A stretch of 63,043 nucleotides of DNA, filler included, from Octopus bimaculoides (Eukaryota): NCBI RefSeq assembly GCF_001194135.2. It is 7 parts of 7 records of this genome, joined end to end, with 100 filler letters (N's around TTAATTAATTAA, not from the genome) between each part and the next. Parts side by side here need not be neighbours in the genome. Positions count along the whole stretch, not along the records: positions 12,364 to 16,222 come from NW_026302928.1; 6 more parts are not named here. One strand, 5' to 3'. A model generated the notes under the pieces. That model saw only the letters and a list, made by a program, of their open reading frames with translations, was not told where the DNA came from and made no database searches. The stretch's first letter is position 1. Every line of letters begins with the position of its first letter. The translations under genes were made by a program, and so were the position numbers. Of the stretch, positions 12,364 through 16,222 are shown one piece after another.

Positions 12364-12619
12364 GAAGCCCGTCGTATATATGTATATACATGTGTGTGTG
12401 TGTGTTTGTGTGTCTGTGTTTGTCCCCCCCCCCAACATCGCTTGACGACCAATGCTGGTGTGTTTACGTCCCCGTAACTTAGCGGTTCGGCAAAACAGAC
12501 CGATAGAATAAGTACTAGGCTTACAAAGAATAAGTCCTGGAGTCGATTTCTTCGACTAAAAGGTGGTGCTCCAGCATGGCCGCAGTCAAATGACTGAAAC
12601 AAGTAAAGGAGTAAAAGAG
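12364..12619 (+). mobile_element. SINE family 1, 3' part
   Basis: Same shared blocks and tail as 6444-6968. Confidence 0.85.
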
Positions 12620-12761
12620 TATACAAGATGGAGCGTGTGATGCATTAATAAGTGTTAATGTGTAGTAGAAGGCATTCTAAAAGATGGAAGTTCAATTCCA
12701 AGGTGAACCTATCAGCAATAACAAGAACAACCACATCAAATTTTAATATTTCTAGAAATAT

Positions 12762-12857
12762 TTATTTGTCAAAATGAAAGAAAGCAAAAGATTGAAGTCC
12801 AGGAATAATTCCAAAAACCATCAAAGAATTTTCTGAAACATCCAAACCAAGAACTTG
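12762..12857 (-). pseudogene. Duplicated C-terminal fragment of the propeller gene (QVLGLDVSENSLMVFGIIPGLQSFAFFHFDK*)
   Basis: Direct copy of 13158-13253, offset 396 bp, with the same frame and stop position. Similarity continues about 75 bp into the 3' flank (12685-12761 vs 13090-13157). An in-frame stop lies just upstream. Confidence 0.8.
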
Positions 12858-13157
12858 GATAATTTACATTACACTACTTTGTAATTGACAACTTTGTGGT
12901 CTGATAGCCAAGTTCGTAAGAGGAGCTTACTATGATAGCTGCAGGTTTCTCTGAATCTACACCTTATACTATTCAATTATATATAAAAGCAGAGATAAAA
13001 ATCTACTAGCATACACTACATACATACCGAACGAGAGACTGTGTTGAAGAATGCTACAGCAATTGTTAGGCAGAGTGCAATGTAAACGGTGCAGGTTCGA
13101 TTCCCAGGTGAACCCAGTAACAATATCAACAACAACGTATTACATTTATGAAAATAC

Positions 13158-16100
13158 TTATCTGTCATAATGAAAGAAAGCAAATGATTTACGGCTAGGA
13201 ATAATTCCAAAAACCATCAAAGAATTTTCTGAAACATCCAAACCAAGAACTTTGTAAACTTCATTGTCTTCATGATTAAGGAGTAAAAATTTTTTCTCAA
13301 TATGTTGCGTTATTTCGTGTTGGGTATCTTGAGGAAATTGGTAAATATTGTTATCGTCATCTGTTATATAAACATATTCCCCGTGTGTGTGCAAGCGATA
13401 CGTGTAAATATCTGAATAGTTCTTTCTGCTGACTTCAACATTCCTAACCAACAATGTCTCCTGGTACCAACAAACGTCAATGACACCACCGCTCTTCCCA
13501 TGTCTATTTCTCTCCTCTCCCTCCCACTTCACAACAACAATGTCACCACCAGATGTCACCACTATATCACACACCACTATGTCTAGCTCTTTCACCGTTA
13601 CCTTCTCCTCCCCAGAGCACACTTCTCCCTTATGCTTACATGTCCCCCCATCGATAACAACCACATCTACATAGTAGTAGTAGATGTATATCTTGTCTTC
13701 CGTTATGTCTTTAATGTAATGACCACCACACACAAGTTCATTGTTGTTGTGCTTATAAATCCTGTTGTAGAATTTTTCAGTTTTGATGGTTTTTAAACGA
13801 CAGAGATCCCTGTTGAAGACCATCAATTCTTTACCAAAGGCGACAATGAAACATTTATCAGTCCACCGACAAATGTCCAGTGGTAGTTGTTGTTGTGGTA
13901 GTTGTTTATGTTGAAGTATGTCACCTGTCGTTGTTCTGATTAATGTGACAGTATTTCTAAACAACAACACACAGACATTGCCATCTAACTTAATTAGTTT
14001 ACTATTGCAGTCGTTACTGTCTTCAATATTATAATTAACAGGTTCAGGGCATGTAGGAATGGAAAGAGGGACCATTGCTGTTCTATATGGAAGTCTCCTC
14101 ACTGATATTTCATCAATTCCTGAATTATTAATCTCTGCTATGTAATTACCACATCTCACCTTTAATCTACCATTACCAATTATTTCACCTGATTCACCTC
14201 TTCTTCCCCCATCTCCACCTCTGTATTCCAATTTATTAATTGATTCATTACTGAATATTTCCTCAGATGTAATGGAAGGGAAACAAAGACCAGAATCAAG
14301 ATTTAATAAAGACACAGATTCCAGAACCTTCACTTGGTCCCCATCAATCTTTATGCAATGACATTCAATCAATTCAATATGTTGACACCAGTAAATACCC
14401 CCCACTTTTCTCCATATTACACCATAAGGGATGAGACTTGTCCAAACTTTAGATGTCTGCAAATCTTTTCCATTCAGTTGAAATAGTTCTTTTCTTTTAG
14501 GAACCGTGGCCATTATGTGTTTTCCTTGTGTAAAACACACACCACCAACTAAACTTGCAAAATTTCTGTAACATAGCAACTTCCCGTCTTTATCAAATAT
14601 TTTAACATTTCCATTATTGGCTTTTTCACACACAACTGTCTTTCCTTCATCAGAAATATCAAAATCTTTTACTTGAACAGCAAATTCGTCTGTTTGTAAC
14701 CGACAAACAGGGAATTTTTCTCGATTCACCATAAACAATCCTTCAACATACAAAAAACTGCCAAGACTGCCAACAAACCTTGGTCCTTTACTGCCTATAC
14801 TGTTGAATTCTACATTTCTATAAATTCTATGATTTAAAAATATCCTCTGGTATTCCCCTGTCTGTGACCAACACAGAATCTTATGCTGATTACTGGTGAC
14901 TCCACAATTGTCCCACCGACAAAAAATGTACAAATAACTGCCACCAATTATAATGTTGGTATAAATATTGTTATAATTCATGTAATGTCTGACTGAATGT
15001 AAGTACTCACCGTCTCTGTTGTAGAAAATGAGGAAATTTTTATTGCTAGCAAAGATGTCATCGTTAGATGTAACTCTAACATCACAGATGTCATTAATAT
15101 AATTACTATTACCACGCCCCTCTGTCATTAATAATGTTTTAGGTATGTCTATGATTTTTATTACTGTCACAGTTGAAGCTATTTCGTCAATAGTAACGAT
15201 ATATAATCGCTGATTCCCTCTCCATTTACCACTAACAACCAGTTGATTGTTCGACAAAGAAGCGATACACTTATATTTTTTTTCTGTCCGGTAAGTTACC
15301 AACGACAATGGAAATTCCACTTTTAATGTCAACAGTTGGTATCTATTATCCCCAGTAGTAATAACCAATGTATTTGACTGCCAACGACACATATTGACAG
15401 GGACAACACTTGTCAAGTTGACAGAGTCCAGAAGTTGACTTCCAAAAGTGAATATCTTAATGTTTTGATTATTACTGTCGTATCCTACAATCAGGTTATT
15501 TTCGGTAATCACTAAATAATCAATAATCATATTTGGTTTGTCTCCAGAACATCGAGGGACAGGAATATGTCTGCCTTTATCAGAAACTGTCAGATCCTGT
15601 AGATATAAAGAGGAAGACAACATTTCACTGACAGAAATGTTTCTGGAAAATACATCTACCAGGTCGATATAATAATTAAGTTGATTATTTGTAACGAGAT
15701 CATTAACCAACAAATTATGATCGTTTATAGCAAACATACGGCTTCTGTCTACAAGATACACAAACGTTTGGTCAATAGATCCACCGTAGAGATTGAGGGG
15801 ACATTTCACCTGGGACATTAAAACACTGGGGACCATCTTAATGCTACAAGGACGACGACTGACATGACCACCACCTCCTATTCTAGTTTTGTACTGAAAT
15901 GCTTTCCTCCTAGTAACAATTAATAGCTTTTCTGTTTTCTTGTCTATTGATAATGATTTCACAAAATAATCGATCTTAATTGTCTTAATTATTTCAACTT
16001 GATTATGATAATTGATGGCTAAAATATCTAAATGTGATGGTTTATCACAATAACAAACAATTTCACATTCACCCATCTTACACACCCGTACATAAGGCTG

Positions 16101-16222
16101 CCTTAATGATACACTTCTCACTGTCTTTGATAGGTTTCCAATGACCCATAATTGTTTCTGTAGGGGTAATGCGACACCTATTTGATGAGAATCCCATCGA
16201 CATATATCCGTAGCTGGAGACG
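13158..16222 (-). CDS. Large terminal coding exon (5'-incomplete) of a protein with four tandem NHL/six-bladed beta-propeller-like modules
   Basis: 987-aa ORF from the track. My translation shows the same frame stays open upstream of the GTG to the gap edge at 16222 (SPATDICRWDSHQIGVALPLQKQLWVIGNLSKT). Recurring blade motifs: P-x-D/N-[IM]-C-R-W (x3) plus GGVCFT, each followed by a Y-x-x-[IV] blade. High-complexity sequence with no internal stops. Confidence 0.9.

What the first reader, a model, noticed from the sequence alone, without database searches (positions are those of the whole stretch)
13158..16222. Uncharacterised protein of 1020 aa or more made of four tandem beta-propeller modules in one exon
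Seen: four aligned modules with period about 225-285 aa. Anchor blades are PATDICRW (16194-16202 for CRW), PVNMCRW (15381), VGGVCFT (about 14530) and PLDICRW (13863). Each is followed about 35-40 aa later by PYVRV / KYKCI / PYGVI / FYNRI. Modules 2-4 are preceded by linkers PVPRC / FPVCR / IPTCP. Established: single propellers of this NHL-like type cap many molluscan TRIM-like proteins. Inference: a quadruple, intronless array is unusual and could be a multivalent recognition or lectin-like scaffold from a lineage-specific family.
Basis: partly seen in the sequence, partly recalled or inferred. Interest (0 to 1): 0.75.

Follow-up and report, generated by a model that had tools for sequence, protein, structure and literature searches.

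The report
Octopus protein of tandem NHL propellers
The stretch encodes the last 1020 residues of an unstudied, octopus-only protein made of about six NHL-type beta-propellers in a row, from a large fast-evolving gene family in which two of the four propellers seen here vary between copies almost only on one face, which suggests binding modules with differing specificities.

Summary

- **Internal repeat:** it is invisible to BLAST but clear in profile-profile comparison (E 1e-5 to 1e-9, above column-shuffled controls).
- **Structure:** AlphaFold2 gives an almost all-beta chain. Module B alone folds confidently (pTM 0.82) into a six-bladed propeller. Its best PDB matches are the NHL domains of TRIM2, Brat and Mei-P26.
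- **Origin of the modules:** all four match, in register, the NHL domain of cephalopod RING/B-box/NHL proteins.
full-length relatives are about 1600-1900 aa with six modules, so the window holds modules 3-6. Module C is short, with four confident blades. No signal peptide is seen in relatives, so a secreted lectin is unlikely.
- **Family:** it is found only in octopods (Octopus species and Argonauta hians), always as "uncharacterized". It is largely clustered on one O. vulgaris chromosome-scale contig, where two copies lie in tandem. The one relative checked, P0001, has a single coding exon, and dN/dS is about 0.55.
- **New finding:** among paralogs, modules B and D vary mainly in the B-C and D-A loops (one face), while A and C are conserved.

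Function is inferred, not shown. This is a new variant of a known kind, of moderate interest.

The parts
13161..16220 (-). Open reading frame of 1020 codons. It is the C-terminal part of a protein of roughly 1780 aa (inferred from relatives). The frame is cut at the piece's edge at its 5' end.
   Evidence: Translation without stops. It is 80% identical over its whole length to aa 763-1783 of O. vulgaris P0001. dN/dS is 0.55, significantly below 1.
13158..13160 (-). Stop codon (TAA) of the gene.
   Evidence: Relatives end at the same position (...FAFFHYDK/R).
15558..16220 (-). Module A (aa 1-221), which is family module 3 without its first blade. It starts at the 'ATDICRW' blade 2. Blades 2-4 are clear and the last blades are degenerate.
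   Evidence: Strand groups in the AF2 model. hhalign to the NHL domain of TRIM-like proteins gives E 2e-8 over 82 columns, to module D E 6e-7 and to module B E 3.5e-5. The first blade is seen upstream in P0001.
15786..15887 (-). Low-complexity Gly/Arg/Ser-rich insertion in module A (aa 112-145), predicted disordered. Its length varies widely between paralogs, and it is poly-Ser/Arg in some.
   Evidence: pLDDT is below 50. There are 134 inserted alignment columns in this C-D loop class.
15576..15719 (-). Very conserved segment at the end of module A (aa 168-215, NNQLN..DLVDVFSRN..SEMLSS..DLTVSDK), modelled with low confidence and short helices. Its role is unknown.
   Evidence: Nearly invariant columns D174, Q180, D186, D189, F191, S203, D209 and V212-K215. 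pLDDT is 23-29.
14706..15557 (-). Module B (aa 222-505), family module 4. It is a complete six-bladed NHL-type propeller, hypervariable among paralogs on the face formed by the B-C and D-A loops.
   Evidence: AF2 of aa 212-515 gives pLDDT 80.5, pTM 0.82 and 24 strands; the N-terminal strand at aa 217-220 is read as completing blade 6. Foldseek top hits are the TRIM2, Brat, Mei-P26 and TRIM3 NHL domains, with TM 0.62-0.70. hhalign to NHL domains gives E 1e-20 over 209 columns. Loop entropy is about 2.0 against 0.7 bits, p = 4e-13.
14055..14705 (-). Module C (aa 506-722), family module 5. It is short, with a canonical NHL first blade (VKDFDISDEGKTVVCEKANNGNVKIFDKDGKLL) and four confidently modelled blades. 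It is conserved among paralogs.
   Evidence: Strand groups are. hhalign to module B gives E 1.5e-5 in register and to NHL domains E 5e-5. The TRIM71 NHL blades match this first blade. Strand entropy is 0.65 bits.
14094..14309 (-). Long low-confidence stretch within module C (aa 638-709), containing a Gly/Arg-rich segment (..YRGGDGGRRGESGEIIGNGR..).
   Evidence: pLDDT is 22-40.
13161..14054 (-). Module D (aa 723-1020), family module 6. It is a propeller with about six blades and long hairpins in blades 2-3. It is hypervariable among paralogs on the same face as module B.
   Evidence: 23 strands with pLDDT 80-93 in the full model. hhalign to module B gives E 7.5e-9 over 190 columns and to NHL domains E 4e-12 over 195 columns. 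Loop entropy is about 1.86 against about 1.05 bits, p = 7e-7.
12667..12865 (-). Partial duplicate of the gene's 3' end. It holds the last 33 codons plus a stop (12762-12863) and about 100 nt of 3' flank, roughly 400 nt downstream of the real stop. It is not part of the ORF.
   Evidence: Direct repeat with 13072-13261. The translation IIQVLGLDVSENSLMVFGIIPGLQSFAFFHFDK* is preceded by stops. The same arrangement is found in O. vulgaris, at 93% nt identity.

Best explanation
The window holds the last exon-free 3.06 kb of a gene from an octopod-specific, tandemly amplified family. Its products are soluble proteins, probably intracellular, of about 1600-1900 aa. They have a variable, charged N-terminal region of about 230 aa followed by six homologous modules of about 220-300 aa. 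Each module descends from the six-bladed NHL propeller found at the C-terminus of cephalopod RING/B-box/NHL (TRIM-like) proteins. The window encodes modules 3 (minus its first blade), 4, 5 and 6.

Shown:
- the intact frame;
- the internal homology;
- the NHL-type six-bladed fold of module B;
- the relationship to TRIM-like NHL domains;
- the restriction to octopods;
- the relaxed but real purifying selection.

Inferred mechanism: the chain works as a multivalent binding platform. Propellers B and D carry paralog-specific ligand-binding faces. That face is formed by the B-C and D-A loops, the same face that binds RNA in Brat. Propellers A and C are kept alike between copies, either by a shared partner or by gene conversion. 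The many tandem copies would then offer many specificities, as in expanded intracellular recognition or restriction families. The ligand (protein, RNA or other) is unknown.

My confidence in the structural and evolutionary part is about 0.85. In the 'diversified binding platform' part it is about 0.35.
For: - **Frame and motifs:**
- **Family:** 59 clusters, all Octopus, all unnamed. 30 of them lie on one 29.19-Mb O. vulgaris contig.
- **Tandem neighbour and single coding exon:**
- **Six modules:** the profile self-alignment runs over more than 800 columns at offsets of one and two modules, E 3e-13 and 1e-11.
- **AF2 whole ORF:** almost only beta strands in groups of four, pLDDT 68. Foldseek hits multi-propeller proteins at E 1e-18.
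- **AF2 module B:** pTM 0.82, six blades of four strands, with the N-terminal strand read as completing blade 6. The best PDB matches are the NHL domains of TRIM2, Brat, Mei-P26 and TRIM3, TM 0.62-0.70.
- **Family profile against PDB sequences:** the TRIM71 NHL domain is best, E 1.8e-4.
- **Family profile against 1.84 billion proteins:** only 44 hits. Beyond the family itself come a cuttlefish RING+B-box+NHL protein at E 2.8e-11 and other B-box/NHL proteins.
- **Each window module against those NHL domains:** E 2e-8, 1e-20, 5e-5 and 4e-12.
- **Argonauta hians homologue:** 38% identical over aa 109-1783 of P0001.
- **Localisation:** no signal peptide or clear membrane span in 12 full-length relatives.
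- **One-face variability in B and D:**. The definition of the top face comes from PMC4015489.
- **Selection:** dN/dS 0.55, p = 6e-6 for being below 1.
Against: - No Pfam model reaches its cut-off on the window ORF or on any of 30 relatives.
- Module C shows only four confident blades and is linked to the others only through B.
- I had no model coordinates or PAE. That the modules are separate closed propellers is therefore shown only for B, which was modelled alone.
- Pairwise dN/dS in the variable loops is 0.48-0.54, so positive selection is not shown.
- dS itself varies up to about 13-fold between region classes (0.06 to 0.8). This points to gene conversion or mosaic copies and could by itself explain why A and C look 'conserved'.
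- The crude net charge of the top-face loops is near zero (+3 for B, -3 for D). That does not match the electropositive RNA-binding face of TRIM-NHL proteins.
- There are no expression or functional data, and no paper mentions these genes.
Confidence: 0.6

Rival explanations
1. A conserved structural or scaffolding protein, for example in the cytoskeleton, cilia or a large complex. Its propellers simply hold fixed partners, and the copy number and loop variability reflect relaxed constraint after duplication rather than diversified recognition.
For: - Multi-propeller scaffolds (DDB1, SF3b130, UTP proteins) are the top whole-model Foldseek matches.
- Modules A and C are well conserved.
- No dN/dS above 1 was found.
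- The six-module architecture is kept between Argonauta and Octopus.
Against: - TM-scores to those scaffolds are only 0.13-0.2, and there is no sequence similarity.
- Housekeeping scaffolds are normally single-copy and widely conserved. This family has dozens of copies and is absent outside octopods.
- The variability is not diffuse. It is confined to one face of two propellers, while the opposite face is nearly invariant.
Confidence: 0.2
2. A young, largely functionless amplified gene cluster. The copies spread by tandem duplication and gene conversion, and many are decaying. This copy is merely still intact.
For: - dN/dS is about 0.55, which is high.
- Many database entries are fragments or patchy models of 112-1000 aa, and P0048 looks chimeric.
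- A truncated duplicate of the 3' end lies beside the gene.
- SINE-like repeats surround it.
- dS heterogeneity suggests conversion.
Against: - 1020 codons here stay open in 35-40% G+C DNA, as do 1781 codons in the O. vulgaris counterpart and 1581 codons (the part held) in its neighbour.
- dN/dS is significantly below 1.
- The architecture is retained at 38% identity in Argonauta, so the family is old and under selection.
Confidence: 0.12
3. A secreted or surface lectin-like multivalent binder.
For: - Six-bladed propellers serve as lectins and extracellular receptors elsewhere; megalin YWTD propellers are among the Foldseek hits.
- Cysteine content is 3.3%, with several invariant Cys.
Against: - No signal peptide or transmembrane segment is seen in 12 full-length relatives from independent annotations.
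- No EGF or other extracellular domain is found by Pfam.
- The nearest relatives are domains of RING/B-box proteins, a class I know as cytoplasmic.
Confidence: 0.05

Closest known systems
[quoted passage not shown]
   Same: - The fold is the same: six four-stranded blades of about 270 aa, with the N-terminal strand read as completing the last blade.
- Sequence similarity is detectable in register, including the shared 'G-I-C-x-W ... TLP..KQ' second blade.
- The face that varies here is the ligand (RNA)-binding face of Brat.
   Different: - No RING, B-box or recognisable coiled coil is present in full-length relatives.
- There are six propellers in tandem instead of one.
- The Pfam NHL model does not reach its threshold.
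- The crude loop charge of the top face is not clearly electropositive.
DDB1 / CPSF160 / SF3b130 family of triple-propeller scaffolds
   Same: One polypeptide is built from several beta-propellers. These are the best whole-model Foldseek E-values, about 1e-18.
   Different: - I know these as seven-bladed WD40-like propellers with interleaved topology.
- TM-scores are only 0.13-0.16 and there is no sequence similarity.
- Module B here has six blades and is of NHL type.
LDL-receptor family YWTD propeller arrays (LRP2/megalin)
   Same: They have repeated six-bladed propellers along one chain, and they appear among the Foldseek hits.
   Different: - I know these as extracellular proteins whose propellers are separated by EGF and LDL-A modules.
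- None of these domains, nor a signal peptide, is present here.
- The sequence relationship is to NHL, not to YWTD.
Expanded, fast-evolving TRIM recognition families (for example vertebrate TRIM5 and fish finTRIM with a variable B30.2 domain; from my own knowledge, not tested here)
   Same: They form tandem gene clusters, are lineage-specific expansions, and concentrate their variability in surface loops of the C-terminal binding domain.
   Different: - The binding domain differs (NHL propeller against B30.2/SPRY).
- No E3 ligase module is present.
- There are six binding domains per chain.
- Positive selection is not shown here.

Membership tests
NHL-repeat six-bladed beta-propeller (Pfam PF01436 type) | A fold of six blades, each a four-stranded antiparallel sheet, closed by a strand from the other end of the domain. 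| tested here: met
   - **Module B modelled alone:** 24 strands in six groups of four, with the N-terminal strand (aa 217-220) read as completing blade 6; pTM 0.82.
- **PDB comparison:** the best matches are the NHL domains of TRIM2, Brat, Mei-P26 and TRIM3, covering the whole domain at TM 0.62-0.70.
- **Other modules:** D has 23 strands at pLDDT 80-93 in the full model. A is cut and C is incomplete.
NHL-repeat six-bladed beta-propeller (Pfam PF01436 type) | Significant sequence-profile similarity to bona fide NHL domains, in register over most of the domain. | tested here: met
   - hhalign of modules A, B, C and D against an alignment of NHL domains from RING/B-box/NHL proteins gives E 2e-8, 1e-20, 5e-5 and 4e-12.
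- hmmsearch of the family profile finds the cuttlefish TRIM-like protein at E 2.8e-11 among 1.84 billion proteins.
- The PDB TRIM71 NHL domain scores E 1.8e-4.
NHL-repeat six-bladed beta-propeller (Pfam PF01436 type) | The Pfam NHL repeat model reaches its gathering score. | tested here: not met
   There is no NHL hit on the window ORF even at E 10. Among 30 relatives only P0053 has a hit, at 18.5 bits against a cut-off of 20.
TRIM-NHL E3 ligases (RING, B-box, coiled coil, one NHL domain) | An N-terminal RING finger and B-box. | tested here: not met
   The N-terminus lies outside the window. No RING or B-box is found in any of the 30 relatives scanned, many of them full-length. Only the patchy model P0048 has Ank+RING, and it looks chimeric. 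The N-terminal family profile shows no similarity to the N-terminal parts of P0078, P0079 or P0083.
TRIM-NHL E3 ligases (RING, B-box, coiled coil, one NHL domain) | A single C-terminal NHL domain with an electropositive top face that binds RNA. | tested here: inconclusive
   There are six modules rather than one. The crude net charge of the top-face loops is +2, +3, -1 and -3 for modules A-D. No electrostatic calculation was possible without coordinates.
DDB1/CPSF160/SF3b130 triple-propeller scaffolds | Three seven-bladed WD40-like propellers with global structural superposition. | tested here: not met
   Foldseek gives E about 1e-18 but TM 0.13-0.16. Module B has six blades and is closest to NHL domains. 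There is no sequence hit.
LDLR-family YWTD propeller arrays | Extracellular proteins with a signal peptide, whose propellers alternate with EGF modules. | tested here: not met
   No EGF or LDL-A domains are found by Pfam. No signal peptide is seen in full-length relatives.

The most novel reading that the evidence does not exclude
An octopod-specific, germline-encoded repertoire of intracellular recognition proteins. Each carries six NHL propellers, and alternate propellers (the 4th and 6th) present hypervariable ligand-binding faces. The gene cluster would supply dozens of specificities against viruses, transposons or other non-self molecules. This would be a propeller-based counterpart of expanded TRIM/B30.2 or LRR receptor families, without an E3 ligase module.
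Probability: 0.2. Interest if true: 0.8.

Novelty: new variant of a known kind. Interest (0 to 1): 0.55.

Why it matters
NHL propellers are well known as single C-terminal binding domains of TRIM-NHL proteins. I know of no described animal protein that strings six of them together with no other recognisable domain, and no paper in the searchable library mentions these genes.

The family is among the larger octopod-restricted gene expansions: 59 clusters at 90% identity, about half of them on one O. vulgaris contig. So far it carries only 'uncharacterized' labels.

The pattern found here gives a concrete hypothesis that can be tested. One invariant face and one hypervariable face occur on two of the four propellers, next to conserved propellers. 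The hypothesis is diversified binding specificities on a common platform. If it holds, it bears on how cephalopods, which lack adaptive immunity, generate recognition diversity. If it fails, the family is still a clean case of domain amplification from a TRIM-like ancestor.

Tried and rejected
- **Self-BLASTP** of the ORF (word size 2, E 10) found no internal repeat. The repeat is visible only with profiles.
- **Pfam** on the ORF and on 30 relatives found nothing above threshold. The weak DUF4934 (19 of 30), DUF3642 and WDR90 hits were not used.
- **phmmer of the ORF against PDB sequences** gave no hit.
- **tRNA and Rfam scans of the piece** found no tRNA and only a chance-level lncRNA match at E 0.97.
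- **TRIM coiled-coil test.** I asked whether the family's N-terminal region matches the N-terminal (RING, B-box and coiled-coil) part of the related TRIM-like proteins. hhalign gave E 0.16-0.35, so the idea is rejected as unsupported.
- **Ank+RING on P0048** as evidence for an E3 ligase ancestry was rejected. The model joins non-contiguous pieces of the family and is probably chimeric.
- **Positive selection on the variable loops** by pairwise Nei-Gojobori counts gave omega 0.48-0.54, so it is not shown. dS is also inflated there, which makes the pairwise test unreliable.
- **Electropositive top face** by loop charge counts was inconclusive.
- **Technical failures.** Two early attempts at the representative search failed, once because the profile was too long and once because the job was lost. 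It was rerun with trimmed sequences.
- **Literature searches** for the LOC identifiers, NHL plus octopus, and cephalopod plus tripartite motif plus NHL found nothing relevant.
- **Source species.** No database protein is more than about 80-82% identical to the ORF.
Full report
**1. What is in the sequence.**

The piece (12364-16222) has 34-41% G+C. On the minus strand a frame runs from the piece's edge (first full codon at 16220) to a TAA at 13158-13160. That is 1020 codons without a stop. The ORF lister shows it only from an internal GTG as 987 aa, because the frame runs off the piece.

The anchor motifs are 272, 284 and 222 aa apart, and each is followed 37-41 aa later by the second motif. 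The descriptive observation is therefore correct.

**2. Is the repeat real?**

- Self-BLASTP finds nothing, so the modules are far diverged.
- I built a profile from 30 family members (alignment A1) and compared it with itself. This gave 1-319~272-613 and 755-952~251-432 at E 2e-7, and 779-831~2-56 at E 2.5e-5.
- I cut the profile into four modules: A 1-221, B 222-505, C 506-722 and D 723-1020. Compared pairwise, they gave A-B 3.5e-5, A-D 6e-7, B-C 1.5e-5 and B-D 7.5e-9, with scores of 40-66. Ten column-shuffled controls per pair never exceeded 24.
- A-C and C-D are at control level, so C is connected only through B.
- On the full-length relative P0001 the self-alignment extends over more than 800 columns, at shifts of one module (E 3e-13) and two modules (E 1e-11). 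The anchors lie near aa 243, 497, 763, 1028, 1311 and 1541.
- The complete protein therefore has six modules. The window's first residue corresponds to P0001 aa 763, so the window holds modules 3-6. Module 3 lacks its first blade, which lies beyond the edge.

**3. Fold.**

*Whole ORF.* AlphaFold2 on the 1020 aa with A1 gave mean pLDDT 68 and pTM 0.58. The chain is almost only beta strands in groups of four, with low-confidence stretches at 112-145, 168-215, 494-517 and 638-709. By strand count:
- B has six blades.
- D has about six (23 strands, pLDDT 80-93).
- A has about four within the window.
- C has four, plus a long low-confidence stretch that contains a Gly/Arg-rich segment.

Foldseek of the whole model against the PDB returns multi-propeller proteins (DDB1, megalin, SF3b130, UTP proteins) at E about 1e-18. 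TM-scores are only 0.13-0.2, as expected when only the domain type is shared.

*Module B alone.* Modelled as aa 212-515 with 46 sequences, it gave pLDDT 80.5 and pTM 0.82. It has 24 strands, which I read as six blades of four, with the N-terminal strand (aa 217-220) as the outer strand of blade 6. Its best PDB matches are the NHL domains of TRIM2 (TM 0.65-0.70 normalised to the target, E 2e-9), Brat, Mei-P26 and TRIM3, aligned over the whole domain.

I had no access to coordinates or PAE. Separate closure of A, C and D is therefore inferred from strand counts and homology, not seen.

**4. Family assignment by sequence.**

- Pfam gives nothing above threshold on the ORF or on 30 relatives. One member has a sub-threshold NHL hit, and 19 have weak DUF4934 hits.
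- A trimmed eight-sequence profile (A4) against PDB sequences ranks the TRIM71 NHL domain first (E 1.8e-4). TRIM2, Thin, TRIM3 and Brat follow. The matches come through the canonical first blades of modules B and C.
- The same profile against 1.84 billion representative proteins finds only 44 hits at E up to 1e-3.
- The strong hits looked up are all Octopus proteins or fragments, plus two Argonauta hians proteins of 1913 and 1925 aa.
- The next best hit is a cuttlefish (Acanthosepion pharaonis) protein with RING, B-box and NHL. It scores E 2.8e-11, and its aa 389-623 align to profile positions 212-450. Then come unnamed B-box/NHL and RING/B-box proteins and a bivalve NHL protein.
- A few bacterial WD40 proteins also appear, as generic propeller noise.
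- An alignment of those NHL domains matches each window module in register: A 2e-8, B 1e-20 (209 columns), C 5e-5 and D 4e-12 (195 columns). It also matches the three upstream modules of P0001.
- The cuttlefish domain even carries the same second-blade signature (..HGICLW...VVVTLPENKQ...).

The modules are therefore diverged NHL propellers.

**5. Not a TRIM protein.**

- The relatives scanned show no RING or B-box.
- Their N-terminal region of about 230 aa is charged and variable. It has no detectable similarity to the N-terminal parts of the TRIM-like relatives.
- One model, P0048, has Ank+RING in front, but it joins non-contiguous family pieces and is probably chimeric.
- Twelve full-length relatives lack a signal peptide or a convincing membrane span. 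An intracellular soluble protein is the likeliest reading, and a secreted lectin is unlikely.

**6. Gene and family.**

- All 59 clusters found in the 5.8-billion-protein search are from O. vulgaris, O. sinensis or O. bimaculoides. All are unnamed, and 30 lie on one 29.19-Mb O. vulgaris contig.
- At the locus of the best hit (P0001, 80% aa identity), aa 3-1783 are encoded by one continuous ORF. A paralog 81% identical lies about 12.7 kb upstream in the same orientation.
- The window is 86.9% identical in DNA to that locus across the gene and into the 3' flank. It is 93% identical over a further downstream segment, and collinear. It is therefore the counterpart, or a very close paralog, in another octopus genome or an unannotated copy.
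- No database protein matches it more closely.
- The Argonauta protein aligns to P0001 aa 109-1783 at 31-38% identity. The six-module architecture thus predates the split of those two octopod lineages.
- No six-module relative from squids, cuttlefish or other molluscs appeared.

**7. Selection.**

- Against the O. vulgaris counterpart, dS is 0.18, dN is 0.10 and dN/dS is 0.55. Against the tandem neighbour, dN/dS is 0.53.
- The excess of synonymous change is significant (Fisher p = 6e-6). The gene is under purifying selection, but weakly.
- dS varies from 0.08 to 0.51 along the gene. It is far lower in modules A and C than in B and D. This suggests gene conversion or mosaic ancestry among the tandem copies.

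**8. Where the paralogs differ.**

- I used the strand assignments of the models. The convention is that the D-A and B-C loops form the top face of an NHL propeller and the A-B and C-D loops form the bottom (PMC4015489).
- In module B, column entropy among the 30 paralogs is 2.12 and 1.96 bits in the B-C and D-A loops. It is 0.68 and 0.75 bits in the A-B and C-D loops, and about 1.1 bits in strands. This holds in every blade (Mann-Whitney p = 4e-13).
- Module D shows the same pattern: 1.87 and 1.85 bits against 0.86 and 1.19 bits (p = 7e-7).
- Modules A and C are conserved overall (strand entropy about 0.65 bits) and show no such bias.
- The alignment around these loops is anchored by nearly invariant bottom loops (TENN, TFDGQ, WQSN, KVEFP). 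The effect is therefore not an alignment artefact, and the variable loops also differ in length.
- Pairwise dN/dS in those loops is about 0.5, so diversifying selection is not shown.
- Loop charge counts do not reveal an electropositive face.

**9. Interpretation.**

*Shown:* the C-terminal four of six NHL-type propeller modules of an octopod-restricted, amplified, single-coding-exon, uncharacterised gene family derived from TRIM-like NHL domains.

*Inferred:* a multivalent binding platform. Propellers 4 and 6 carry copy-specific binding faces, and propellers 3 and 5 do something common to all copies or are homogenised by conversion.

A defence-type recognition role is attractive because of the lineage restriction, the tandem amplification, the fast evolution and the face-specific variability. 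It is untested.

*Rivals:* a plain scaffold, a partly decaying amplified cluster, or a secreted lectin. These are weighed in their own sections.

**10. Verdict.**

Three corrections apply: six modules rather than four, module C is incomplete, and the protein is probably not secreted. It is a new variant of a known kind (NHL propellers) and not a member of the TRIM family. Interest is moderate at 0.55. It is a real, unannotated and unusual architecture with a testable hypothesis, but without functional evidence.

Noticed in passing
window 12667-12865 (coding-like part 12762-12863), minus strand: About 400 nt downstream of the real stop lies a truncated duplicate of the gene's 3' end. It holds the last 33 codons plus a stop (IIQVLGLDVSENSLMVFGIIPGLQSFAFFHFDK*) and about 100 nt of 3' flank, and it is preceded by stop codons. 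The same remnant sits downstream of the O. vulgaris counterpart (L001:22962-23332), at 93% nt identity, which is higher than the 87% of the coding region. An AATAAA overlaps its stop codon, so it may lie in the gene's 3' UTR.
   Followed up: partly
window 12364-12620: A dispersed, SINE-like repeat. At least eight copies, in both orientations and at 76-87% identity, occur within the 33-kb O. vulgaris locus L001. It adjoins a (CA)n microsatellite at about 12375-12425.
   Followed up: partly
window about 13072-13136 and 12667-12731: The duplicated 3' flank contains a tRNA-like T-arm (GGTTCGATTCCC / GTTCAATTCC). ARAGORN finds no tRNA. This may be a relic of a tRNA-derived element.
   Followed up: no
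window 13161-16220, compared with L001:17421-22763: Synonymous divergence from the O. vulgaris counterpart is very uneven. dS is 0.08 in codons 1-100 and 501-600 but 0.51 in codons 901-1012. It is much lower in modules A and C than in B and D. This suggests gene conversion or mosaic recombination among the tandem paralogs.
   Followed up: partly
window 15576-15719 (aa 168-215): One of the most conserved stretches of the whole family (..NNQLN.YIDLVDVFSRNI.VSEMLSS.LYLQDLTVSDK..) is the part AlphaFold models worst, with pLDDT 23-29 and short helices. It has no match to NHL blades. It might be a family-specific inter-propeller element or a binding motif.
   Followed up: no
window 15786-15887 and 14094-14309: There are Gly/Arg-rich, RGG-like disordered insertions (IGGGGHVSRRP; YRGGDGGRRGESGEIIGNGR). 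They sit in the otherwise conserved modules A and C. In some paralogs the first is replaced by long Ser/Arg runs.
   Followed up: no
P0048 (O. vulgaris CDS model), not in the window: One annotated family member starts with ankyrin repeats and a RING finger (Pfam). It then contains only non-contiguous pieces of modules 3-6. It is probably a chimeric gene model across a degraded copy and a neighbouring gene.
   Followed up: partly
L001:1-4743 (O. vulgaris OX597841.1): The gene immediately upstream of the P0001 counterpart is a paralog, 81% identical and in the same orientation. This shows head-to-tail tandem arrangement at this locus.
   Followed up: partly
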